This document shows, one piece after another, positions 50,809-61,948 of a stretch of DNA of 64,000 bases. The notes below the pieces were generated by a model, which was not told the DNA's origin, did not search any database, and worked only from the letters and a program-made list of their open reading frames with translations. Every line of letters begins with the position of its first letter. Position 1 is the first letter of the stretch. The stretch lies in IMG/VR virus record IMGVR_UViG_3300017763_000002, positions 1-64,000 of that record; one strand, written 5' to 3'. The position numbers and the translations under genes were made by a program.

Positions 50809-51345
50809 ATGGATGAGTACAAAGATTTAAAATTTATTAACGACGCGCAAGACACAAGCGAAGCGTTAAGAATGTATAAGTCACAATTATATAAAATGGC
50901 GCAATGCGCTCAAAAAATATTCGAATCCTTGAATTCTGGAGATGAAATTGAAGAATGGATGAAATCGTCGATTCTACGCGCATACAATGGCCTAGAAGAG
51001 GTTTCTAGTTATATAGACTATAATTCATCATTTCCTAAGGTAGAAGACCCTCTAGAGCCCTTAGAGGACGATCCAAGGAAAAACAATAATTATTTAACCA
51101 ACGAAGACAAGCGTTTTCCTGTGCCCCAAGAAGCTGAAGGTGGCGATGATTTTGTTGGAAGGTGTATCTCAGACCCAGCAATGAAGGGAAGATACCCCCA
51201 ACAATCTGATAGATTTATGGCGTGCTTGTTAATATATAATAAAAATATTGAAAACGCAGCAGATAATCCTGGAGTTCCTTTTGAAGATCCAATGGAAAAG
51301 AAAGATGAAACTCAAATGGATCCAGAAAAGCCTATTTTACCTTAA
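50809..51345 (+). CDS. hypothetical protein (start refined from 50788)
   Basis: GTGTA(50792)-12nt-ATG; MYKSQL...EEWMKS and P.P...E..DDFVGRC motifs recurrent in phage head-region proteins. Confidence 0.65.
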   Translation: MDEYKDLKFINDAQDTSEALRMYKSQLYKMAQCAQKIFESLNSGDEIEEWMKSSILRAYNGLEEVSSYIDYNSSFPKVEDPLEPLEDDPRKNNNYLTNEDKRFPVPQEAEGGDDFVGRCISDPAMKGRYPQQSDRFMACLLIYNKNIENAADNPGVPFEDPMEKKDETQMDPEKPILP

Positions 51346-53791
51346 GTTTTAATTTTCCTTTTTCAAAAACTAGCGAAGTCTTTGTTCCGTCGCCAATTTC
51401 TTTTTTAATAATTAATTCAGATAGAGGGTCTTCAATTTCTTTTTCAATCATTCTTGCTACCGGCCTAGCTCCAAAATTTTGATTGGCAATATGCTCACTG
51501 ATATATTTCTTAGCAGAAGCTGATAATGAAAAGGATATGTTCATTTCTTTTAATTTATTTTTTAAAGGTCTAAGTTCAATATTAAATATTTTAATTATAT
51601 CTTCCTCATTCAAGTTTTGATATACTAATACTTCTGATATTCTGTTCACGAATTCTGGACGAAGCATTTCGCAAGCTTTTTGTATAATTTTTTCTTTCTT
51701 CTTATCTTCATTGTCTACCGAGTTAAATCCAATGCCACCTCCTTTGTGAGATATTTCAGATCCTATATTGCCTGTGATAATTATTACAGAGTTAGAAAAG
51801 TCTCCAACTCTTCCTAGTCCGTCGGTCAATCTACCTTCATCCATAATTTGCAGTAAACATTGAATTGCATCAGGGTGAGACTTTTCTATTTCATCAAATA
51901 ATATAACGCTATATGGATTTTTACTTATTTTATCTATTAAAAAAGAACCCTCTTCATACCCTACATAACCCGGCGAAGCTCCAGACAATTTATTGCTGGA
52001 AGTTTTATCTGAAAACTCTGACATATCAACTCTAATAATTTCTGAGTTTTTGCCAACCAAGAATTGAGAGAGTATTTTCGCTGTATGTGTTTTGCCAAGT
52101 CCTGTTTGCCCTAGTATTAGGAAACTAGCAATTGGCTTTCGCCTTTCTCTTAAACCAGATTTTGATCTTAATATGGCTTTCGAAATAGATTCTACAGCAT
52201 CGTCTTGTCCTACAATATGGTTTTTGAGTTTTTTCTCCAGAGATAAATATATTTCTGCATCACTTTTAGATAGCTCCGACATCGGTATTTTTGTGGATTG
52301 CGACACCGTTCTGTAAATGTCTTGAGGGGTTATTTTCTTTTTGTTGCTGAATTTTCTTTTTGCCCAAGAGTTTAAACTTTTTTTATACTTGTCTAATAGC
52401 TCGTCTTGAGCTCGTAATATTTCTTTTGTATCCTTAAAGTTACTAGTCAGTTCGTCTTCTTGGTTCATTAAAATTTCAAGCTGCTTTTCCATCTCTACAG
52501 TAGACTTCGGTCTTTTGAAAGATTTGATTTTTACTTTTGCGCCTGTCTGGTCTAATATATCTATAGCTTTATCCGGAAAGTTTTTAGAAGGTATATATCT
52601 TGCGGATAGCTCTACAATAATTTCAAGGCATTCATCTGGGAATTCTACATAATGAAACTCTTGGTACTTATCTTTTATACCTTTTAATATTTCTAATGTT
52701 TCTTCTTTTGAAGGGGCTCTGCAGCGCACAGCTTGAAATCTGCGATCAAGGGCTCCATCTTTGAGTATAGTCTTTTTATATTCTCCATCTGTAGTCGCCC
52801 CTATGCATCTGATATTGCCTCTTGCTAAGGCAGGCTTTAGCATGTTAGCTGCGTCCATGCTACCCTCCGCGCTACCCGCTCCAACCAAAGTGTGAATTTC
52901 ATCTATGAAAAGTATCTTATTATCATCTTGAGAAACTTCTTCAATAACCGATTTTAGACGCTCTTCAAATTGCCCCCTATACTTTGTTCCAGCAATCATA
53001 GACCCAAGATCTAAGCCGAAAATAATTTTATTTAAGAGCGGTTCTGGGCAATGCCCTGAATATATAGAGTTGGCCAAGCCTTCAATAATAGCCGTTTTTC
53101 CAACTCCTGGGTCACCAATAAGAACCGGGTTATTCTTGGTTCTTCTTGATAAAATCTCGCAAACCTCTAAAATCTCTTCGTCTTTGCCTATGATTTTATC
53201 TAGTTTTTCTTGTTGAGCTAAATCATTATAGTTAATGCAGAACTTTTCTATTGATGATGATTTTTTAGAAGGAGCTTGCTGCGCTTCTCTCGGAGTTTCT
53301 TGTGACGGAGAGATAAAAAATGGAGTGAAATTGGGAGAACTTACATTTTCTGAAGACAACTGAAAGTAGTTCTTGATTTCATCAATAATTAAATCTTCTG
53401 GAATTTGCATTGATTTAAAATATTTTGATACAGGAGATCCATCATACTTAAGTAGAGACAGTAGTATGTGTTCTATACCTACATAATCGTGCCCAAAGTT
53501 GGCGCTAATTACGGAAGAGATTTCAAGCACCTGCTTGAACTTAGAAGAAAACTCTAATTTGGGATCTTTACTATTGTTTTTTTTGCTAGGAGGTTTCATG
53601 GAGGAGGTTAATTTTAATGGGTCAATTCCCATAGAAGTTAAAACTTCATGAACGATTCCAGCTTTCAACTGCAATATGCCTAGGAATAACTCCTCTAAAC
53701 AAACTTTTGACTTTTTATTTTCCTTAGCTATTTTTCTTGAAATTTCTATTGCTCTTTGAGCTCTTGGTGTAAAATTTGGTTTTGGTTGCAT
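51332..53791 (-). CDS. clpC: ClpC/ClpA-type AAA+ unfoldase (start refined from 53806)
   Basis: Clp-N repeats (FTPRAQRAI, YVGIEHILLSLL); NBD1 GDPGVGKT/FIDEIH; NBD2 GQTGLGKT/FDEIEK; ClpP-docking IGF loop (GGIGFN); GTGTA-10nt-ATG. Confidence 0.9.
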   Translation of the reverse strand: MQPKPNFTPRAQRAIEISRKIAKENKKSKVCLEELFLGILQLKAGIVHEVLTSMGIDPLKLTSSMKPPSKKNNSKDPKLEFSSKFKQVLEISSVISANFGHDYVGIEHILLSLLKYDGSPVSKYFKSMQIPEDLIIDEIKNYFQLSSENVSSPNFTPFFISPSQETPREAQQAPSKKSSSIEKFCINYNDLAQQEKLDKIIGKDEEILEVCEILSRRTKNNPVLIGDPGVGKTAIIEGLANSIYSGHCPEPLLNKIIFGLDLGSMIAGTKYRGQFEERLKSVIEEVSQDDNKILFIDEIHTLVGAGSAEGSMDAANMLKPALARGNIRCIGATTDGEYKKTILKDGALDRRFQAVRCRAPSKEETLEILKGIKDKYQEFHYVEFPDECLEIIVELSARYIPSKNFPDKAIDILDQTGAKVKIKSFKRPKSTVEMEKQLEILMNQEDELTSNFKDTKEILRAQDELLDKYKKSLNSWAKRKFSNKKKITPQDIYRTVSQSTKIPMSELSKSDAEIYLSLEKKLKNHIVGQDDAVESISKAILRSKSGLRERRKPIASFLILGQTGLGKTHTAKILSQFLVGKNSEIIRVDMSEFSDKTSSNKLSGASPGYVGYEEGSFLIDKISKNPYSVILFDEIEKSHPDAIQCLLQIMDEGRLTDGLGRVGDFSNSVIIITGNIGSEISHKGGGIGFNSVDNEDKKKEKIIQKACEMLRPEFVNRISEVLVYQNLNEEDIIKIFNIELRPLKNKLKEMNISFSLSASAKKYISEHIANQNFGARPVARMIEKEIEDPLSELIIKKEIGDGTKTSLVFEKGKLKLKVK

Positions 53792-53805
53792 CATAGTAAT
53801 ATACA

Positions 53806-56385
53806 CTACTTTAGGTCAGCGAGTTTCATATATATATTCTCCTTTAAAACATTAATGTTGTTCACAAAGAATATATCGTCAGCTTTAGACCCATAGGTCA
53901 CAATTATTGAGTTTTTTTCTGGAGCTTCATTTATATTTAAAAATTCATCAAGTTTGTTTTCTTTTGAATTATTGCAAAGCATGCAGTTTAGAGATCCAAA
54001 TTCATCTGCTATTTCTAGTTTCATGTATTTATTTCCAGATCTACTAATTCTAGTAAAGCAATCTAATACAATTCCTATCACGCTAAGGTTTGAGTTTTTT
54101 CTTTTTTCTTTATATTCTTTTAGATTTGTTAGTTTTAGCCCAGGCTTGCCAAATATATTTCTTAAGTCTTCGCTATAAGAATAGCCTAGCAGTTGATTCT
54201 CGAAGTACCAATTAGCAAAGCTGCTGGATTTGCTATTTTGCATATATATATTTTTATAAGGTTCGTATTTTTTCTTAAAGGTTTGAAATCTAGATTCCTT
54301 GAATAAAGGCCTTCCATCATCTCCCACTAAATTATTATCTCTAGCACTAACAATCGCATCTAGCAACTTGTAATTAAACTTTTCGCCCAACTGAATAAAA
54401 TTTCTTTTCTCGCGATCCGTAAGAACATTAAACACTTGAGCCTCTAGAACTAACAAGGGTCTGCTGCCTTCAAAATTAGAAAGCGCTCCTGCTTGTATTA
54501 AAGCGCACAGTGTGCCGATGTGTAATCCAGCTTGCTTGGCAGATATAAACATTTCATATTTTGTGTCTCCTGATTGAGATCTGAATTCTATTAATGATTT
54601 TAAAGCTTTTTCAGAAATACCTTTGATGGAGTTTAATCCGTACCTGATGTCGTTGCCTTCAATGGAGAAATCCATCTCTGATTTAGATAAATTGGGGGGC
54701 AAAAGTTTTATTCCGAAATAAGATAATTCTTTACTTATTTTACCCACTTCTTCTTGAGGAGAAGGTTCAAACTTTGTCATATTAAGCAAGGATAAGAAAA
54801 AATGTATTGGATACTTAAATTTTAGATAAGTTGTCCACGCGGCTAATGTAGAATACGCAATAGAATGGCTTTTATTGAAAGAGTAGTTAGCGCTATCCTC
54901 CGCCACCCTCCAAAGCACTTCTCCGGCATCCGCTCCTTCTCTGTTCAAGTCTTTGTTGGTTAGCTTGTTGTCTTCAATTTTTTGGAATATTCTCTGCTTC
55001 CATTCTGCCATTTTTTCTACTTTCTTCTTGCCAACAATTCTTCTGAGCTGTTCAGACTCATCTAAGGTGAAACCTACTTTAACGGCCATCTTCATCAGCT
55101 GTTCTTGGTACAAAGGAATACCTCCAGTATAGTCTAATATGTCATCAAAGATGGGATGAACACTCTGGAAATTTCCTGTTTCAACATAAGTCTCATAGTT
55201 AGATAAAAAATCTAAAGCTCCAGGTCTGGCGATAGCTAGCACGGCGCTTAGCTCTTCTATATTTTTAGGCTTGATTTTTCTGCATACTTTAAAATCTGTT
55301 TCCGCTTCAATTTGGAACAATCCTCTAGGACAAATAAGGTTTTGTAGGTTTGAGTATATATCACCAGAATGAACATCTATCTCTTCTAAATCAATGCCTA
55401 CTAAATTTGCGGTATTATGTAGCACGCTTAAAGTTCTTAAACCTAAAATGTCGAACTTCACCATTAGCTCCGCAACCCAATTCATATCATACCCTGTGAT
55501 TTTTTGCCCGTCTGAATTTATAGAAACAGGACAAACTTCAGATATAGGTCTATGTGAAATAGCTATACCAGAAGGATGCACACCAGTGTTTTTGTTAAGG
55601 TTTTGAATTTTTTTGGCGATTAGTACGATTTCTTCGTTATCTTTACTCCACTCTCTGAAGTCTTCGCTTTCTTCTAGAGAGACCTCTATAGACGCAACCT
55701 TTCCAAATTTCTTTGGAATCATGTCGCTAACCCTGTTTGCATCTTGCTCGCTTTGGTCTCCTACTATTTTAATGCATTCTTTTAGGCATAGCTTACTGCT
55801 TAAGGTGTTCAGTGTTAGTATTTTAGCTGTTCTTCCGGGGTGTTTTTTCTCAATATAATCTACAACTAAGTGGCGATATTCATAAGCTATATCGTTATCA
55901 ACGTCAGCAAGTAAACTTCCGTCTAGGTATGTTTCTCCTTCGCTTTCTATTTTTCTCGCTCTACTTTTAGACACAAACCTTTCAAAGAACAATTCATTTT
56001 CAATAGGGTCTATCTTAGTTACATTGATTAAGAATAAAACTAAAGAGCCTGCAGCACTGCCTCTTCCTGGCCCTGTTGGTATTCCGTTTTCATGACAGAA
56101 ATTAATAATATCCCAATTTAATAAAATATAATCTGTAAATCCTAATTCTTCTAATATGTTTAATTCATCATTTAGTCTTTTGATATATTGTTTATGATTA
56201 TCTTTTTTATTTAATTCTTTAGACAGTAAGCCTTTGTTACATATTTTAGTTAGAAATTCAAAATTAGATACATCGTTTTCTATTCCTAGCTCTCTGTAAA
56301 ATCTAGAATCTATTTTAAGCTGAGGCAGTTTTACGCCAGGCTCCATAGCTTTATTATAAGTGGAGAAAGAATCTAAAAAACTCAT
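53806..56385 (-). CDS. dnaE: DNA polymerase III alpha catalytic core, lacking the PHP domain
   Basis: GPGRGSAAGSLV, LLADVDNDI, HPSGI, KFDILGL, YQEQLM, YSFNKSHS, IRYGLNSIKGI and a C-terminal OB fold. Confidence 0.95.
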   Translation of the reverse strand: MSFLDSFSTYNKAMEPGVKLPQLKIDSRFYRELGIENDVSNFEFLTKICNKGLLSKELNKKDNHKQYIKRLNDELNILEELGFTDYILLNWDIINFCHENGIPTGPGRGSAAGSLVLFLINVTKIDPIENELFFERFVSKSRARKIESEGETYLDGSLLADVDNDIAYEYRHLVVDYIEKKHPGRTAKILTLNTLSSKLCLKECIKIVGDQSEQDANRVSDMIPKKFGKVASIEVSLEESEDFREWSKDNEEIVLIAKKIQNLNKNTGVHPSGIAISHRPISEVCPVSINSDGQKITGYDMNWVAELMVKFDILGLRTLSVLHNTANLVGIDLEEIDVHSGDIYSNLQNLICPRGLFQIEAETDFKVCRKIKPKNIEELSAVLAIARPGALDFLSNYETYVETGNFQSVHPIFDDILDYTGGIPLYQEQLMKMAVKVGFTLDESEQLRRIVGKKKVEKMAEWKQRIFQKIEDNKLTNKDLNREGADAGEVLWRVAEDSANYSFNKSHSIAYSTLAAWTTYLKFKYPIHFFLSLLNMTKFEPSPQEEVGKISKELSYFGIKLLPPNLSKSEMDFSIEGNDIRYGLNSIKGISEKALKSLIEFRSQSGDTKYEMFISAKQAGLHIGTLCALIQAGALSNFEGSRPLLVLEAQVFNVLTDREKRNFIQLGEKFNYKLLDAIVSARDNNLVGDDGRPLFKESRFQTFKKKYEPYKNIYMQNSKSSSFANWYFENQLLGYSYSEDLRNIFGKPGLKLTNLKEYKEKRKNSNLSVIGIVLDCFTRISRSGNKYMKLEIADEFGSLNCMLCNNSKENKLDEFLNINEAPEKNSIIVTYGSKADDIFFVNNINVLKENIYMKLADLK

Positions 56386-57023
56386 ACTTCTACCTCCCAG
56401 AGCATTTTTTGAAAAACATCCATATTCTTTTGAATATCATACATTGCGTCATGCAGTTTACTGGGGTCAAAATCTATATCGTAATCCCTGCAGCATTGCT
56501 GCAGATTTACTTTTAAGCCTTTTTCCCTGAAATTTAAAAGCTTATACATCCACGCGATCCTTTCAGAGTTATTCTTCTTTTTAATATCTTTTTTAATTGA
56601 CCTTGCTAGGCAAACTGTGTCTATTGATCTATTAATGTAAGAGTAATCTGCGCTTTTATTTAAAAGCTTTCTGTGGATATTATGTATATAAACATCAAAC
56701 CCTAAAATGTTGTGGCCTAAAGGTATGATTTTTTCATCATACAGGTATTTTTCAAAATGTTCCAAAGCTTTTTCTGGGCAAGATTTTCTTTTATTATACA
56801 TGGATTTTGTGAAACCAGTAATCCTGGCAGCTTCTTTCGAGACTTGTAAATTCTTCCAGTCTAATATATAATCCCCTTGATCTAATATTTTATCTCCCTG
56901 AAAAAGCATGAAGGCTAATTGCCAAGGTTTATTTTTGGTTGATATTAAATTCAGATTACATGTTTCATAATCAAATATTATATACTTTTGGTTTTTATTA
57001 AACCTTAATAATTCTTCTTTCAT
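56382..57023 (-). CDS. DEDDh 3'-5' exonuclease (DnaQ/epsilon-like)
   Basis: IIFDYET, GHNILGFDV and LHDAMYDI motifs. Confidence 0.9.
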   Translation of the reverse strand: MKEELLRFNKNQKYIIFDYETCNLNLISTKNKPWQLAFMLFQGDKILDQGDYILDWKNLQVSKEAARITGFTKSMYNKRKSCPEKALEHFEKYLYDEKIIPLGHNILGFDVYIHNIHRKLLNKSADYSYINRSIDTVCLARSIKKDIKKKNNSERIAWMYKLLNFREKGLKVNLQQCCRDYDIDFDPSKLHDAMYDIQKNMDVFQKMLWEVEV

Positions 57024-57026
57024 ATT

Positions 57027-57755
57027 TTAAAATGGTTGTTGTTGATGTTCTAGAAATGATTCGAAGCAAAATTCATCGCTGCCAAAATGGTCTAGACCTG
57101 GATTGCCTAAGTTTCTTTGTCCAAATTTTCTACTACAGATGCATTGATATGTTTGAAAAGCTTCGATGTCTTTCCTGCTTTTATATTTTACAGACTTAAC
57201 CTCTTGTGTTATATAGTTATTAATGTCACAGTATTCTAATAATTTAGACCTAATAACAGAATCAAAGGGTAGCCCGTTGTGTTCCATGAAAAAAGTAGGA
57301 TTAAAATGTTTTAGATTAGGAGTGCAGTTTTCAAACTCCATGAGATTTTTATGCAAAAAAGAATCGTAAAAAGGTATCACCATGGTTAAATCGTTCGACC
57401 AATACTTCTTTATTACTTCTAAACTTATTGAATTAGTTTCTGGGTCTTTTTGGCTAAAGATGATGTTTAGCTTTTTGCACCCCTGACTATTATTTGCAAA
57501 TATAACCAGTTTATGTTTTTGAGAATCACATAAAAAAGATAACCCAAAGACTAAGTCTATTTCATTTTCAATAGAAGTTGACAATGCTTGAGGAAAACCT
57601 GTTAAGCTGTTTTCAACTAAAACAATTTTATCTAAATTGTTTTCTTTTGCAATATCAAAAATACTATCCGAAGTATTTTCTTTTTCACCCCCAGGTGCGG
57701 CGAGCGTTAATATGCTTTTTCCAATGCTATAGTGAGAAGTGAATATAGGAATCAT
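57027..57755 (-). CDS. stand-alone PHP domain of DnaE, metal ligands degenerate (start refined from 57794)
   Basis: IFTSHYSIGKSIL, IVLVENSLTGF, LVFGLSF and KLVIFANNSQGCKKLN parallel the DnaE N-terminal PHP motifs (H.YS..D, DH, AKN..GY.NL). Confidence 0.8.
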   Translation of the reverse strand: MIPIFTSHYSIGKSILTLAAPGGEKENTSDSIFDIAKENNLDKIVLVENSLTGFPQALSTSIENEIDLVFGLSFLCDSQKHKLVIFANNSQGCKKLNIIFSQKDPETNSISLEVIKKYWSNDLTMVIPFYDSFLHKNLMEFENCTPNLKHFNPTFFMEHNGLPFDSVIRSKLLEYCDINNYITQEVKSVKYKSRKDIEAFQTYQCICSRKFGQRNLGNPGLDHFGSDEFCFESFLEHQQQPF

Positions 57756-57764
57756 TATGGTAGA

Positions 57765-57794
57765 AGTATACCATAATAATACGCATATTGTCAA
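57765..57794 (-). promoter_or_regulatory. sigma70-type promoter for the polymerase operon
   Basis: TTGACA-18nt-TATACT with TG extension; ATG 57755 is 9 nt downstream. Confidence 0.75.
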
Positions 57795-57802
57795 GAATTA
57801 AC

Positions 57803-58621
57803 TCAGTACTTTTTACTGGCTGCAGAAGGTTTTTTGTGGGTGTATCCCATTTTTTTATACTTCAAGTGATCGGAGTAAGTTTTAGCTTGGAAAGCCTTAC
57901 CCGACTTGTCGTACATAGTATGCGGTTTAAAATCTTTTTCGCCTTCTTCAGCTTTAGATTTTTTCTTTTTGTTTAAAATTGCTTTTTTGACAGCATCTGG
58001 TAATTTTTTTTGTTGATCAGTCAGCTTGGAATTATCTTCTTTCTTATCTTCTGCCTTTGATTTTTTCTTAGGCTTTTGAGCTTTTTTCCAAGATTTAGAA
58101 TCAGGTCGATCTTTATCTCCGGGTTTTGCTGGTCGGTAATTTTTACCTTCACGTTTTTTCTTGTCTCGTATGTTGTCCCAAAGTCCACGTTTGCTTTCTG
58201 AAACCTCCGACTCATCTAACATTTCAAGAATTTCCTCTTCAAAGTCAACGCTACTGGTAACTTTGCTAACTGGTTTCTTACTCCACATTTTACAAGACCA
58301 ATATTTAGCTTTGGTTTTTGGTCCTGGGCTGTCACAATTATGTCTAGCTCTAAAAGACTTTCTTCTTGAGGGGCTATCTCGTTTAATTTCCATGTTCGGG
58401 TCTCCGAAATTAACTTTAACAACGTTACCCTTTTCGTTTTTAACATAAACTGAAAACTTCTTCGGTCCCCCTGAAGTTCTAAATGGTTTATTTAACTTTT
58501 TGCCTTTATTTTTCTCCTCGGCAAAAACTTCTTCAGAAACAGCTTCCTCAAATCCCTGTTCGTCTAAGAGCGCAGCTCTAATTTCTTCTGTTAAATCAAT
58601 GTTTTTAATATATTTTTTCAT
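57803..58621 (-). CDS. Lys-rich mosaic hypothetical protein (possible virion core protein)
   Basis: LNKPFRTSGGPKKFSVYVK...VNFGDPNMEIKRD...RKSFRARHNC...YWSC, a module I recall from large-phage DUF6321-like proteins; GLWDNIRDKK module. Confidence 0.7.
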   Translation of the reverse strand: MKKYIKNIDLTEEIRAALLDEQGFEEAVSEEVFAEEKNKGKKLNKPFRTSGGPKKFSVYVKNEKGNVVKVNFGDPNMEIKRDSPSRRKSFRARHNCDSPGPKTKAKYWSCKMWSKKPVSKVTSSVDFEEEILEMLDESEVSESKRGLWDNIRDKKKREGKNYRPAKPGDKDRPDSKSWKKAQKPKKKSKAEDKKEDNSKLTDQQKKLPDAVKKAILNKKKKSKAEEGEKDFKPHTMYDKSGKAFQAKTYSDHLKYKKMGYTHKKPSAASKKY

Positions 58622-59889
58622 TATGATAAAAGTTCTCGTATAATTTTCCCATCGTGCGCAACCTTAAACGGTCTGCCGCTTGGAGAAAAAGTTATTTTTC
58701 TTGTGTCTAATCCCATCGCATATGCTATAGTTGCATTTAGATCTTCCATGCCAACCCCGCCTTCTTCTACGTAGTGGGCTCGTTCATCAGAGGCTCCATG
58801 TACAAACCCAGACTTAATCCCACCGCCTGCAAGTAGGGCGCTAAATGAAGAGGGGTGATGGTCTCTGCCAATTCTTCCAGGTTTTACTTCAGGAGTCCTG
58901 CCAAATTCACTTGCGACAACAACCATAGTTTCAGATAATAACCCTCTTACGTCTAGATCTTCTAGTAATGTAGAAAGCGCTTGGTCTAAAGTCGCTCCAC
59001 GAGTTTCCATAGCGCCAAAAACGTCATTATGCATATCCCAACCGCCGAGTATTACTTCAATAAATCTTACATTATTTTCAACTAATCTTCTAGCTAAAAG
59101 ACAACCCTGTCCAAAGTTGTTATCTCCATAAGATTCTCTAGTTTTTTCGTTTTCCTTTGTCAAGTCAAAAGCTTCTAAATCTTTGCTCTGCATTAACTTG
59201 ACTGCATCATCGTATAGATCTGTATAAGCTCTAACTCTTTTTTGTGGAAAGTCAGATAAAAAATCATCGTTAAATGCTTTAGCAACATCTAGTCTTTGGT
59301 TGTATAAGTTTTGATCTAAATAGTCAGATTTTTGTACATTTTGTATGCCTGCGCTAGGATTTCCTAGCGGAAGCGGCCCGTATCTTTTTTCGAAATATCC
59401 TGCGCCTAAAATATTGCTTCCACCATTAACTCTAACATTAGCTGGTAAATTGGCGTTTGCGTTCCCTCTCATTTTTGTAATCCAGCTTCCAAGAGTTGGG
59501 TGAATTATAGTTCCTCTTTTTTGGTAGCTTGTGTGAAGTAAATAATTAGCCTGTTCGTGAGCGCCCTGGTTTGTATTGAGAGATCGAAGCAAGGAAGCTC
59601 TATGCATTTGAGAAGCGGTTTTTGGCAGCCAATGCCCAAGCTGTATTCCATGAGCAGAAGAGTCGATTGCATTTGTTTCTCCCATAACATCTGAATTTTC
59701 GGGCTTAGGGTCAAAAGTGTCAATGTGCGTCATCCCTCCTCCCATATATAAGAATATTACGCTTTTCGCTTTGGGTATAACGTCAGGTGTATTTAGCGCT
59801 AATAGTTCTTTTGAGCCAATTATAGCATTAACACCTAACAAGCCTTTGGCGAGGCCAGCGACAAAACTTCTTCTACTTATATCGTTCAT
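58621..59889 (-). CDS. DUF1501 family protein with Tat-like signal
   Basis: ISRRSFVAGL, AKSVIFLYMGGGMTHIDTFDPKP, FGQGCLLARRLVENNVRFIEV, GWDMH, LLEDLDVRGLL, SEFGRTP, GRDHHP and GGIKSG motifs; GTGTA-11nt-ATG. Confidence 0.92.
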   Translation of the reverse strand: MNDISRRSFVAGLAKGLLGVNAIIGSKELLALNTPDVIPKAKSVIFLYMGGGMTHIDTFDPKPENSDVMGETNAIDSSAHGIQLGHWLPKTASQMHRASLLRSLNTNQGAHEQANYLLHTSYQKRGTIIHPTLGSWITKMRGNANANLPANVRVNGGSNILGAGYFEKRYGPLPLGNPSAGIQNVQKSDYLDQNLYNQRLDVAKAFNDDFLSDFPQKRVRAYTDLYDDAVKLMQSKDLEAFDLTKENEKTRESYGDNNFGQGCLLARRLVENNVRFIEVILGGWDMHNDVFGAMETRGATLDQALSTLLEDLDVRGLLSETMVVVASEFGRTPEVKPGRIGRDHHPSSFSALLAGGGIKSGFVHGASDERAHYVEEGGVGMEDLNATIAYAMGLDTRKITFSPSGRPFKVAHDGKIIRELLS

Positions 59890-59905
59890 AACATATTATA
59901 TACAC

Positions 59906-61948
59906 TTATTTAATAAAAATAAACTCATGAGAATTCAATAAAATCCAAGATACATGCTTGAATCCATCTGGTTTTTCAATGATATTTTTTAAAGCATTAA
60001 ATTCTCTAGTCGTTGGTTTTCTGGCTAATATCGAAAGAAAAACGCTTTCAATCTGTTTATTTTTTGATTTTTCTGATTGCATTTGCTCCATAAAATCTGC
60101 GTCTTTTTTACGTAAGATGTTTGTCTCCACGAAGCCATTCAGCAGACTTAAAACCTGCGGGGTATTTGGCTCTTTACTGCTATTATCTATCTGCTCTCTA
60201 TCTGAACCGCCAAACTGCCGTATAAGGTGCCCTCCTGGGGCTGGAGAGCTAAGGTAGCTACTTCTCACTAGCTGGCGGTCGGGGAATTTATTATTAGAAT
60301 ACTGATGTTCGTCTATTAGTTTTATAAAATTTCTTTCTCCGGGGTTTTCGTCAGCGAGTTTTTTGATATCTTGATAAATTTCTTGACCCGACATGTCTTT
60401 ATACCTATTGAATATTGGTGAATAGTCAGGTTGATTATGAAGGTAAAATCTTTTTTGACTGTCGATATCATTGTAAACTAGAGTAACTAAAGAGTCCCAT
60501 AACTGCTCTCCTGTCATGCGTCTGAGTATTGGCCCTTCAAAATTATATTCTTCTAGACTTTTGTAGTCAGCTTTTTTTGACTGTCTTTGGAAAAGTTTTG
60601 TATTAAGTAAAATTTTTTGGTATTCTCTGATGTCGTAGTTCACACTAACAAAAATGCGCTCTAAGTATTTCATGAGAGTTTCATTACTCGAAAGAGTTTT
60701 ATCTGACATTGTATCTATTGGTTCGATTAGTCCTGCGCCAAAAATTTGCTTCCATATTCTATTTGCAATCATGGTGGTGAACCTTGGGTTATCTTTGCTT
60801 GTTATCCATTCTGCTAAAATTTTTCTGCTTTTAGGGTCAGACGCTTTAGGGTCAAATATAGGTTTGGGGGTAAAAATCGCTTTAGCATAAACTGTATCAC
60901 CAGGTTTGCCATTTGATTCCGCAAAATCTCTGGGCAGTTTTATTTGGCCAGTGCCATTACTTTCTATCCCAAATATTAAAGAGTCTCTGATTTGGTTTCT
61001 CCAGTTATTGAATAAACCCGCCCTTGAATCTGCATCCTTATTGATCTCAGAACTTAACTTGCCGATTTCTCTACCAGCAGAATTAACTCTTACATTGCCA
61101 ATGCCAGAGGTGAATGCTGTCATTTCATAAAATTCTTTTTGTGTCCAGCGGTCAAAAGGATGGTCATGGCACATAGCACACTGCAGTCTTGTCCCTAAAA
61201 ATATTCTTATGGTGTGGGAAAGATTGTCGGCTTGCATGCCTCTATCTCTTAAGAAGTAACTAACTGCTGCGCTTTCTTTTGTTTCGAATATTCTACCTGT
61301 ACTTGACACTAATTCTGTAACAATTTGATCGTAGGTTTTGCCTTCTCTTAAAGATTCTCTTAACCATTTTCTATAAACCGCTCCAACGTTAATATTAGTT
61401 CCGTTTACTCTATCTTTTATCCTGAGCATGTCGCTCCACCAATTCATTTGATGGCTCACATAACCTTCAGAGTTAAGTAATTTTAAAACGAGGCTTTGTC
61501 GAGGATTAGGCGTTCTGTCGCTTTCAAATTCTTCTATCTCTTTTTGTGTGGGGATTCTACCTATTAAAGTAAGATAAGTACGTCTAATATATACCGAGTC
61601 TTCTATGTCTTTAGTTTTTTGAATTCTTTTTTCTCGTAAGTTTTGCTCGATTAAAGAGTCAATGTATGATGAATAAATTTTTAAAGTCTTATTATCTAAT
61701 GGGGTTTTAACTTGAGGTATTTGGCTGTACCTATTTTCTGAATGATAAAGCTCAATTTGTTTTTGAGTGTCTTGTGTTAACATTGACGTTTTGAATCTAA
61801 ATTGTTGAAGATCTTCAGCTCTCTGTATGATTACATGAGTTTCATTAGCTTCTAATATTTTTGCGTCAAGACTTTTGCCATTATTGAAATATAATTTATC
61901 AGCAAAACAAAAAGATGTAGATAGTAATAATAGTATTGATATTTTCAT
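59906..61948 (-). CDS. secreted SHD1-like + DUF1549 + DUF1553 (PSD1-type) protein
   Basis: Signal peptide; YIRRTYLTLIGRIPT, LQCAMCHDHPFDRWTQKEFY, LAEWITSKDNPRFTTMIANRIWKQIFGAGLIEPID, RRMTGEQLWDSL and SWILLNSHEFIF motifs. Confidence 0.9.
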   Translation of the reverse strand: MKISILLLLSTSFCFADKLYFNNGKSLDAKILEANETHVIIQRAEDLQQFRFKTSMLTQDTQKQIELYHSENRYSQIPQVKTPLDNKTLKIYSSYIDSLIEQNLREKRIQKTKDIEDSVYIRRTYLTLIGRIPTQKEIEEFESDRTPNPRQSLVLKLLNSEGYVSHQMNWWSDMLRIKDRVNGTNINVGAVYRKWLRESLREGKTYDQIVTELVSSTGRIFETKESAAVSYFLRDRGMQADNLSHTIRIFLGTRLQCAMCHDHPFDRWTQKEFYEMTAFTSGIGNVRVNSAGREIGKLSSEINKDADSRAGLFNNWRNQIRDSLIFGIESNGTGQIKLPRDFAESNGKPGDTVYAKAIFTPKPIFDPKASDPKSRKILAEWITSKDNPRFTTMIANRIWKQIFGAGLIEPIDTMSDKTLSSNETLMKYLERIFVSVNYDIREYQKILLNTKLFQRQSKKADYKSLEEYNFEGPILRRMTGEQLWDSLVTLVYNDIDSQKRFYLHNQPDYSPIFNRYKDMSGQEIYQDIKKLADENPGERNFIKLIDEHQYSNNKFPDRQLVRSSYLSSPAPGGHLIRQFGGSDREQIDNSSKEPNTPQVLSLLNGFVETNILRKKDADFMEQMQSEKSKNKQIESVFLSILARKPTTREFNALKNIIEKPDGFKHVSWILLNSHEFIFIK

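What the first reader, a model, noticed from the sequence alone, without database searches (positions are those of the whole stretch)
53806..57755. Family C replicase split into three genes: PHP, DEDDh exonuclease and catalytic core
Seen in sequence: a sigma70 operon ordered PHP (242 aa, metal ligands degenerate), exonuclease (213 aa), DnaE core (859 aa, starting at the post-PHP linker). PHP and exonuclease are in the same frame, separated only by TAA-AAT before the ATG, so readthrough or one substitution would give a PHP-Exo fusion. Exo and core overlap by ATGA. No intein motifs are present. Established: DnaE is normally one chain with PHP attached; PolC carries a DEDDh exonuclease inserted in its PHP domain; E. 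coli epsilon binds the PHP domain in trans. Inference: a heterotrimeric replicase that is an architectural intermediate between DnaE+epsilon and PolC.
Basis: partly seen in the sequence, partly recalled or inferred. Interest (0 to 1): 0.75.

Follow-up and report, generated by a model that had tools for sequence, protein, structure and literature searches.

The report
Three-gene split DnaE replicase of marine phages
A 205-kb marine phage encodes its only DNA polymerase, a bacterial Pol III alpha (DnaE) type enzyme, as three separate genes (a dead PHP domain, a proofreading exonuclease and the polymerase core); about 80 related phage contigs share the split, which shows that the link between PHP and polymerase, present in all bacteria, is dispensable.

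Summary
On the minus strand, 57755-53806, lie three tightly packed genes. The first is a 242-aa protein whose predicted fold is the complete PHP domain of Pol III alpha (Z 23.4 to E. coli alpha residues 6-250); at least 8 of its 9 metal ligands are replaced. The second is a 213-aa DEDDh exonuclease with all catalytic residues invariant. The third is an 859-aa DnaE core that starts exactly where the PHP domain ends in fused relatives.

The window belongs to a 204,906-bp viral record in which this is the only recognisable DNA polymerase. The TAA between PHP and Exo is real: it is identical in assemblies from four studies. The split is ancestral to a large clade: 78 IMG/VR relatives all have three separate genes, with PHP-Exo spacing from -20 to +1835 nt and differing frames. 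The in-frame TAA-AAT-ATG is therefore coincidental, and readthrough is not supported.

More distant relatives show PHP-core, PHP-Exo and PHP-Exo-core fusions that are collinear with the gene order. A three-chain model places PHP against both core and Exo (0.86 against 0.63 for the best control). The system works like E. coli alpha-epsilon. It does not have the PolC topology and is not an intermediate towards it. I rate it a new variant of a known kind, apparently undescribed.

The parts
57765..57794 (-). sigma-70-like promoter match (TTGACA, 18 nt, TG-TATACT), 9 nt upstream of the PHP start codon; implies a near-leaderless mRNA
   Evidence: 11 of 12, best in the 8-kb region. Consensus match only, function not shown.
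57027..57755 (-). gene for a stand-alone PHP domain (242 aa), catalytically dead, proposed scaffold subunit
   Evidence: AF2 model pLDDT 87.7; Foldseek top 20 hits are all C-family polymerase PHP domains, E 3e-12; VIA-align Z 23.4, rmsd 2.5 A, model 1-242 on E. coli alpha 6-250; ligands replaced; fused to DnaE cores in relatives
57021..57029 (-). junction TAA-AAT-ATG between PHP and Exo, same frame, no Shine-Dalgarno
   Evidence: unchanged in contigs of 4 runs from 4 studies; neither frame nor spacing is conserved in relatives
56382..57023 (-). gene for a DEDDh (DnaQ/epsilon-like) 3'-5' exonuclease, 213 aa
   Evidence: PF00929 5.6e-12; phrog_192 'DNA polymerase exonuclease subunit'; D18, E20, D110, H191, D196 invariant in 47 sequences; best PDB sequence match is the PolC exonuclease domain 2p1j; only RNase_T gene in the genome
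56382..56385 (-). ATGA overlap of Exo stop and core start (translational coupling); GGGAGG lies 8 nt upstream
   Evidence: the same -4 overlap occurs in 39 of 78 relatives and -1 in 17
53806..56385 (-). gene for the DnaE-type polymerase core (859 aa): palm, thumb, fingers, HhH, OB; no PHP and no tau-binding tail
   Evidence: PF07733 2.3e-59, PF17657, PF14579; PRK05673 positions 287-1028 of 1146; catalytic D161, D163, D312 invariant; only PF07733 in the genome, and no PolA or PolB
51332..53806 (-). ClpA/B-like double AAA+ ATPase gene directly downstream; conserved neighbour, role in this system unknown
   Evidence: Pfam Clp_N, AAA, AAA_lid_9, AAA_2, ClpB_D2-small; phrog_4871 2.6e-227; follows the core in all relatives whose contig reaches that far

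Best explanation
The three genes encode the subunits of the phage's own replicative polymerase, a Pol III core in three pieces. The 859-aa protein does the synthesis. The 213-aa DEDDh protein does the 3'-5' proofreading. The 242-aa protein is the PHP domain of DnaE. It has lost its metal site and acts as a non-catalytic scaffold that docks on the palm and N-terminal tail of the core and also holds the exonuclease, as the inactive PHP of E. coli alpha holds epsilon. The genes are probably co-transcribed, and Exo and core are translationally coupled (ATGA). The split is an old, selected state of a large clade of ~200-kb marine phages and not damage. Shown: gene structure, fold, residues, conservation and fused relatives. 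Inferred: assembly, scaffold role, operon and coupling.
For: The PHP-like protein has a DnaE-type PHP fold: Z 23.4 and rmsd 2.5 A on E. coli alpha 6-250, against Z 12 or less for non-polymerase PHPs. Its profile hits Taq alpha 50-249. At least 8 of 9 ligands are replaced. The DEDDh residues and the polymerase aspartates are invariant. All 78 IMG/VR relatives (54-88% core identity) keep three separate genes in the same order, and the core starts at the same residue. The proportion of nonsynonymous differences (pN 0.07-0.33) lies far below the saturated synonymous proportion (pS 0.69-0.83) in all three genes. Of 131 cluster representatives with a full PHP match, 109 are complete stand-alone proteins with a median of 254 aa. 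Fused relatives are collinear: in P0018 the PHP is 4-252 and the core starts at 259; in P0120 the order is PHP, Exo, core; P0075 is PHP-Exo. The complex model scores 0.86 against 0.63 for the best of 3 controls. That mark was reached by 58 of 80 solved complexes and 2 of 110 mismatched pairs. PHP touches core residues 3-14, 190-208 and 252-306 and Exo residues 25-30, 107-131 and 147-165. The 0.63 control had the core replaced, so the PHP-Exo contact stands on its own. This is the only DNA polymerase and the only RNase_T gene in the 205-kb genome.
Against: There is no biochemical evidence. The complex score may reflect the model's memory of intact DnaE structures. PHP evolves about three times faster than Exo and core (66% against 86-88% identity to L071), and in many relatives unrelated genes separate it from them, so stoichiometric co-expression of PHP is not guaranteed. 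No clamp or clamp loader was found, so how processivity is achieved is open. The promoter is only a consensus match.
Confidence: 0.8

Rival explanations
1. The functional product is a PHP-Exo fusion made by readthrough of the in-frame TAA (or the TAA is an error), so the enzyme has two chains.
For: TAA-AAT-ATG is in frame with no Shine-Dalgarno before the Exo ATG. Natural PHP-Exo fusion proteins exist in distant relatives (P0075, P0105).
Against: The TAA is identical in contigs from four studies. In relatives the PHP-Exo gap ranges from -20 to +1835 nt, most are in different frames, and the two nearest relatives have a 167-aa SET-domain gene there.
Confidence: 0.04
2. The three ORFs are fragments of a decaying single-chain polymerase gene (a pseudogene or an assembly artefact).
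For: Single-chain PHP-Exo-core relatives exist (P0054, P0120).
Against: 78 relatives have the same three intact genes. Catalytic residues are invariant, all three genes are under purifying selection, and starts and stops sit exactly at the domain borders. It is the only polymerase in a record that CheckV estimates as complete.
Confidence: 0.01
3. The PHP-like protein is not a polymerase subunit. The core works with the exonuclease alone (or alone), and the PHP protein has acquired another role.
For: PHP is the fastest evolving of the three and is often separated from Exo and core by inserted genes. In the contig of P0075 the PHP-Exo gene is not next to a core gene. New invariant motifs (PFYDSF, FGL) replace the metal site.
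Against: The PHP gene is always present upstream in the same order. It is fused to the core in several lineages with a linker of 5-10 aa. The conserved C-terminus of PHP and the N-terminus of the core lie in the predicted interface. Published work on E. coli (Barros et al. 2013, recalled from memory, not read here) reports that PHP is needed for the stability of alpha.
Confidence: 0.1
4. The enzyme is an accessory repair or translesion polymerase, and the phage replicates with the host replisome.
For: No clamp, clamp loader or tau-binding tail was found.
Against: The core scores as replicative DnaE and well below that as error-prone DnaE2 (433 against 261 bits). An active proofreader is attached. 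The genes lie in a module with DnaB-like helicase, PD-(D/E)XK nuclease and NUDIX. There is no other polymerase in 205 kb.
Confidence: 0.05

Closest known systems
E. coli Pol III core, alpha (DnaE1) plus epsilon (DnaQ)
   Same: DnaE-type core, catalytically inactive PHP, and a separate DEDDh exonuclease that the model places on PHP. It follows the rule that an inactive PHP is complemented by DnaQ (PMC12926913).
   Different: PHP is a separate polypeptide and not the N-terminus of alpha. The exonuclease has no long C-terminal tail like that of epsilon. No theta subunit and no tau-binding domain are present. The exonuclease gene lies between the PHP and core genes.
PolC of Firmicutes (PDB 3f2b)
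   Same: C-family polymerase with a DEDDh exonuclease associated with PHP. The Exo profile's best PDB sequence match is a PolC exonuclease domain (2p1j).
   Different: In PolC the exonuclease is inserted inside the PHP fold (the model aligns to residues 342-788) and all parts form one chain. Here PHP is complete and uninterrupted, and the core scores only 52 bits on PolC models.
Split-intein DnaE of cyanobacteria
   Same: A C-family replicase encoded in pieces. Relatives of this family also carry inteins and split-intein halves at the SFNKSH site (P0082, P0127).
   Different: The cyanobacterial pieces are rejoined by trans-splicing inside the polymerase. Here the breaks lie at domain borders and no intein sequence is present, so the pieces must stay separate.
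Phage DnaE genes interrupted by homing endonuclease genes (Bacillus phage vB_BauM_KLEB27-3, gp166 / HNH / gp164)
   Same: A phage-encoded DnaE annotated as two CDS with a mobile gene between them. The relatives here also hold variable inserted genes between the pieces.
   Different: That break lies inside the polymerase core and PHP stays attached. It is not a PHP | Exo | core partition.

Membership tests
C-family DNA polymerase, DnaE type (core) | Pol-beta-like palm (PF07733) with three catalytic aspartates, finger domain (PF17657) and HhH domain (PF14579) | tested here: met
   (2.3e-59, 1.2e-29, 1.9e-15); D161, D163, D312 invariant in 38 sequences
C-family DNA polymerase, DnaE type (core) | PHP domain at the N-terminus of the same chain ('universally present', PMC12926913) | tested here: not met
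   The core starts at DnaE model position ~287. PHP is a separate gene product here and in 78 relatives.
C-family DNA polymerase, DnaE type (core) | Closer to replicative DnaE1 than to DnaE2 or PolC | tested here: met
   NCBIfam PRK05673 433 bits, error-prone PRK05672 261 bits, PolC 52 bits, all below the equivalog cut-offs
PHP domain of Pol III alpha | Seven-stranded distorted barrel that superposes on alpha residues ~1-270 | tested here: met
   Z 23.4, rmsd 2.5 A, 223 residues, model 1-242 on 2hnh 6-250; other PHP enzymes Z 12 or less; Foldseek E 3e-12
PHP domain of Pol III alpha | Nine metal ligands HHDHEH[C/H]DH (active proofreader) | tested here: not met
   Alignment to phage DnaEs with the full motif gives H>I, H>T, D>gap/K, H>N, E>S, C>F, D>S, H>K. 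The sixth ligand is ambiguous: a His lies one position off and is not invariant.
DEDDh (DnaQ-like) exonuclease | ExoI D-x-E, ExoII D, ExoIII H-x4-D | tested here: met
   D18, E20, D110, H191, D196 invariant in 47 sequences; PF00929
PolC | Exonuclease inserted within PHP, all in one chain | tested here: not met
   PHP is complete and contiguous. Fused relatives have the order PHP 5-245, Exo 259-461, core 486 onwards.
Split-intein trans-spliced polymerase | Intein halves at the ends of the pieces | tested here: not met
   The pieces add up to PHP, Exo and core with no extra sequence. The ends align to linkers of 5-25 aa in fused relatives.
Heterotrimeric Pol III core-like complex | Physical association of the three proteins | tested here: inconclusive
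   The prediction supports it: 0.86 against 0.63 for the best control, a mark reached by 58/80 solved complexes and 2/110 mismatched pairs. A prediction is not a measurement.

The most novel reading that the evidence does not exclude
In this phage lineage the PHP domain, the proofreader and the polymerase are freely separable modules that have been split and re-fused several times. Solo, PHP-Exo, PHP-core and PHP-Exo-core forms are interleaved on the PHP tree. The single-chain PHP-Exo-Pol enzymes of relatives would then have arisen by fusion of split genes. That would be an independent, observable route to a PolC-like all-in-one replicase and a natural three-piece Pol III core for dissecting what PHP does.
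Probability: 0.3. Interest if true: 0.7.

Novelty: new variant of a known kind. Interest (0 to 1): 0.6.

Why it matters
Surveys of thousands of bacterial genomes state that every C-family polymerase carries its PHP domain in the same chain (PMC3919608, PMC12926913). Why an inactive PHP is always kept is an open question. This abundant group of ~200-kb marine phages shows that the covalent link is dispensable, while the domain itself is kept and conserved as a separate protein. Nature also supplies matched fused and split versions, so the structural role of PHP and its role as the docking site of the proofreader become directly testable by mixing purified pieces. It also matters for annotation. 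Pfam misses this PHP, so these polymerases look PHP-less, and their contigs are mis-binned into bacterial MAGs.

Tried and rejected
- **Pfam, NCBIfam and tblastn:** Pfam and NCBIfam gave nothing for the PHP protein (PF02811 on the genome). tblastn against cultured phages also found nothing. Only structure and profile searches identified it.
- **Cultured relatives:** no cultured phage is closer than 35% identity, so no annotated relative exists.
- **Sequencing error at the TAA:** rejected.
- **Readthrough or a conserved frame:** rejected.
- **Inteins at the junctions:** rejected.
- **Homing-endonuclease origin of the breaks:** the inserted genes are mostly SET, GMP reductase, cupin and small ORFs; HNH appears only once. 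A phrog_18407-like ORF recurs at the junctions, but its function is unknown and BLASTP between two members was not significant. This is left as a lead.
- **Direction of evolution:** the core tree puts PHP-core forms basal and PHP-Exo-core as sister to the split clade (supports 0.93-0.97). The PHP tree nests fused forms among solo ones. The core tree lacks the cores of the other solo lineages, so direction is unresolved.
- **dS:** saturated, so only pN/pS is usable.
- **Host:** GTDB hits are mis-binned MAG contigs of discordant phyla.
- **Literature:** five searches found no description of a stand-alone PHP subunit. The library lacks most papers of subscription journals.
Full report
**Observation.** The window is the first 64 kb of a 204,906-bp IMG/VR virus record that CheckV estimates as complete. 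Three ORFs lie on the minus strand exactly as described:
- 57027-57755, 242 aa from the ATG. Relatives confirm this start, not the upstream TTG.
- 56382-57023, 213 aa.
- 53806-56385, 859 aa.

The sequence reads CCA TTT TAA AAT ATG at the first junction, and the second junction is an ATGA overlap preceded by GGGAGG. The strongest sigma-70-like match of the surrounding 8 kb (TTGACA, 18 nt, TG-TATACT) ends 9 nt before the first ATG. That is a consensus match, not proof of a promoter.

**Identity of the three products.**
- *Core.* It carries PF07733, PF17657 and PF14579. It aligns to DnaE models from position ~287 to ~1028 of 1146, so it lacks both the PHP domain and the C-terminal tau-binding part. 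The catalytic aspartates D161, D163 and D312 are invariant in 38 relatives.
- *Exonuclease.* The middle protein is an RNase_T/DnaQ-type exonuclease. D18, E20, D110, H191 and D196 are invariant in 47 sequences. Its best solved sequence relative is a PolC exonuclease domain.
- *PHP.* The first protein has no Pfam or NCBIfam hit, and its only PHROG hit is a faint one to the N-terminus of phage DnaE.
  - An alignment of 49 homologues (A1) gave a confident model, with pLDDT 87.7 and pTM 0.86.
  - The 20 best Foldseek matches are all PHP domains of C-family polymerases, with E down to 3e-12.
  - VIA-align gives Z 23.4 and rmsd 2.5 A, with model 1-242 on E. coli alpha 6-250. Non-polymerase PHP enzymes reach Z 12 at most.
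  - The profile also finds Taq alpha 50-249.
  - Aligned to phage DnaEs that have the canonical HHDHEH[C/H]DH site, at least 8 of the 9 ligands are replaced (I, T, gap/K, N, S, F, S, K). The sixth is ambiguous.
  - It is therefore a complete but catalytically dead DnaE-type PHP domain.

**The split is real and old.** Contigs assembled from four runs of four studies are identical at 57021-57029. A scan of IMG/VR found 99 relatives of the core at 54-88% identity, every one matching from residue 1-3 to 859. In the 78 loci that could be analysed, PHP, Exo, core and a Clp-like ATPase are separate genes in the same order.
- The Exo-core junction is mostly ATGA (39 loci) or a 1-nt overlap (17 loci). 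In about a dozen loci a small gene is inserted there.
- The PHP-Exo spacing runs from -20 to +1835 nt, often in different frames. About half of the loci have inserted genes there: a SET-domain protein in the two nearest relatives, GMP reductase, a cupin/JmjC protein and an HNH nuclease.
- The in-frame TAA-AAT-ATG of this genome is therefore a coincidence of one lineage and not a recoding signal.

All three genes are under purifying selection, with pN 0.07-0.33 against a saturated pS of 0.69-0.83. PHP evolves about three times faster than the other two. The core family is very common in marine metagenomes, with contigs up to ~209 kb, and all 120 best hits are 786-866 aa without PF02811.

**Fused relatives.** A profile search with A1 over 1.84 billion representatives found 566 clusters. 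Of 131 representatives with a full PHP match, 109 are complete stand-alone proteins with a median of 254 aa. The rest are informative:
- PHP-core fusions: P0018, P0096 and P0109. In P0018 the PHP is 4-252 and the core begins at 259.
- The same fusion with a mini-intein (P0082, P0111, P0139) or ending in a split-intein half (P0127, P0132).
- PHP-Exo fusions: P0075 and P0105.
- Single-chain PHP-Exo-core proteins: P0054 and P0120.

Genomic contexts confirm that these are real genes. Domain order in the fusions equals gene order here, and the gene borders fall on linkers of 5-25 aa.

**Assembly.** A three-chain prediction was run with core 1-540, Exo and PHP, taking PHP as the partner in question. 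It scored 0.86 against 0.63 for the best of three controls. That mark was reached by 58 of 80 solved complexes and 2 of 110 mismatched pairs.
- PHP touches the core's N-terminal tail (residues 3-14) and its palm (190-208, 252-306).
- PHP also touches Exo residues 25-30, 107-131 and 147-165.
- The 0.63 control was the one in which the core was replaced. PHP-Exo contact is therefore predicted independently of the core.
- This may partly be memory of intact DnaE structures, so it supports binding but does not show it.

**Context.** No other polymerase (PolA, PolB), no second RNase_T gene, no beta clamp and no clamp loader were detected in the genome. A DnaB-like helicase lies just beyond the window. 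PD-(D/E)XK and NUDIX genes lie upstream, and the terminase is on the other strand. This is the phage's replicase.

**Evolution.** On a core tree rooted with Salmonella DnaE, PHP-core forms are basal and the PHP-Exo-core pair is sister to the split clade (supports 0.93-0.97). On the PHP tree, fused forms sit nested among solo ones. Several fission or fusion events must have occurred, but their direction is unresolved.

**Comparison with known systems.** Functionally this is closest to E. coli alpha-epsilon: an inactive PHP is complemented by a DnaQ-type proofreader, the rule noted in PMC12926913. It is not PolC-like in topology, because PolC has the exonuclease inside PHP, and the core is DnaE-like. 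Bacterial surveys describe PHP as universally present in the polymerase chain (PMC3919608, PMC12926913). Marine jumbo phages of group PGC_A were noted to carry PF07733 (PMC9123017), but I found no description of the split.

**Verdict.** The heterotrimer reading is well supported by sequence and prediction. The readthrough idea and the PolC-intermediate idea are not supported. It is a new variant of a known kind.

Noticed in passing
window 58621-61948 (-): A DUF1501 gene (PF07394, 8e-111) and a DUF1549/DUF1553 (PSCyt2/PSD1) gene sit inside the phage replication module. From memory, this pair is typical of Planctomycetes, Verrucomicrobia and Bacteroidota. It may be an auxiliary gene pair or a hint to the host.
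   Followed up: partly
window 51332-53806 (-): A ClpA/B-like double AAA+ ATPase (phrog_4871, 2.6e-227) directly follows the polymerase core here and in all relatives whose contig reaches that far. The conserved linkage to the replicase is unexplained.
   Followed up: partly
L002:3863-4363, L025:3392-4363, L057:3482-4351, L062:3427-3942: The gap between the PHP and Exo genes is a hot spot for inserted genes in relatives: SET-domain protein, GMP reductase/IMPDH-like protein, cupin/JmjC protein and HNH nuclease.
   Followed up: partly
L028:2083-2565, L070:2790-3272; P0023:255-434, P0045:235-431: A ~160-aa ORF family (phrog_18407, function unknown) occurs free-standing between Exo and core in some phages. 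In others it is fused to the C-terminus of the PHP protein. It may be a mobile nuclease that targets the junctions.
   Followed up: partly
P0082, P0111, P0139, P0054, P0120, P0127, P0132: Relatives of the core carry mini-inteins at the SFNKSH site, and two end in what looks like the N half of a split intein. The window's core has none.
   Followed up: partly
window 57803-58621 (-): A 272-aa lysine-rich protein (phrog_7595, unknown function) lies upstream of the PHP gene. It is conserved next to PHP in the nearest relatives and elsewhere in the locus in others.
   Followed up: no
L094-L103 (GTDB MAG contigs): The PHP family occurs in GTDB genomes only on 10 MAG contigs assigned to discordant phyla (Neomarinimicrobiota, Woesebacteria, Halobacteriovorax, Flavobacterium, Nitrospinales, Cellvibrionales). 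One contig is 210,818 bp long. They look like phage contigs binned by mistake.
   Followed up: partly
G000 whole record: No beta clamp, clamp loader, PolA or PolB was detected by Pfam in the 205-kb genome. A DnaB-like helicase lies at 64898-65374. How the polymerase becomes processive is open.
   Followed up: partly
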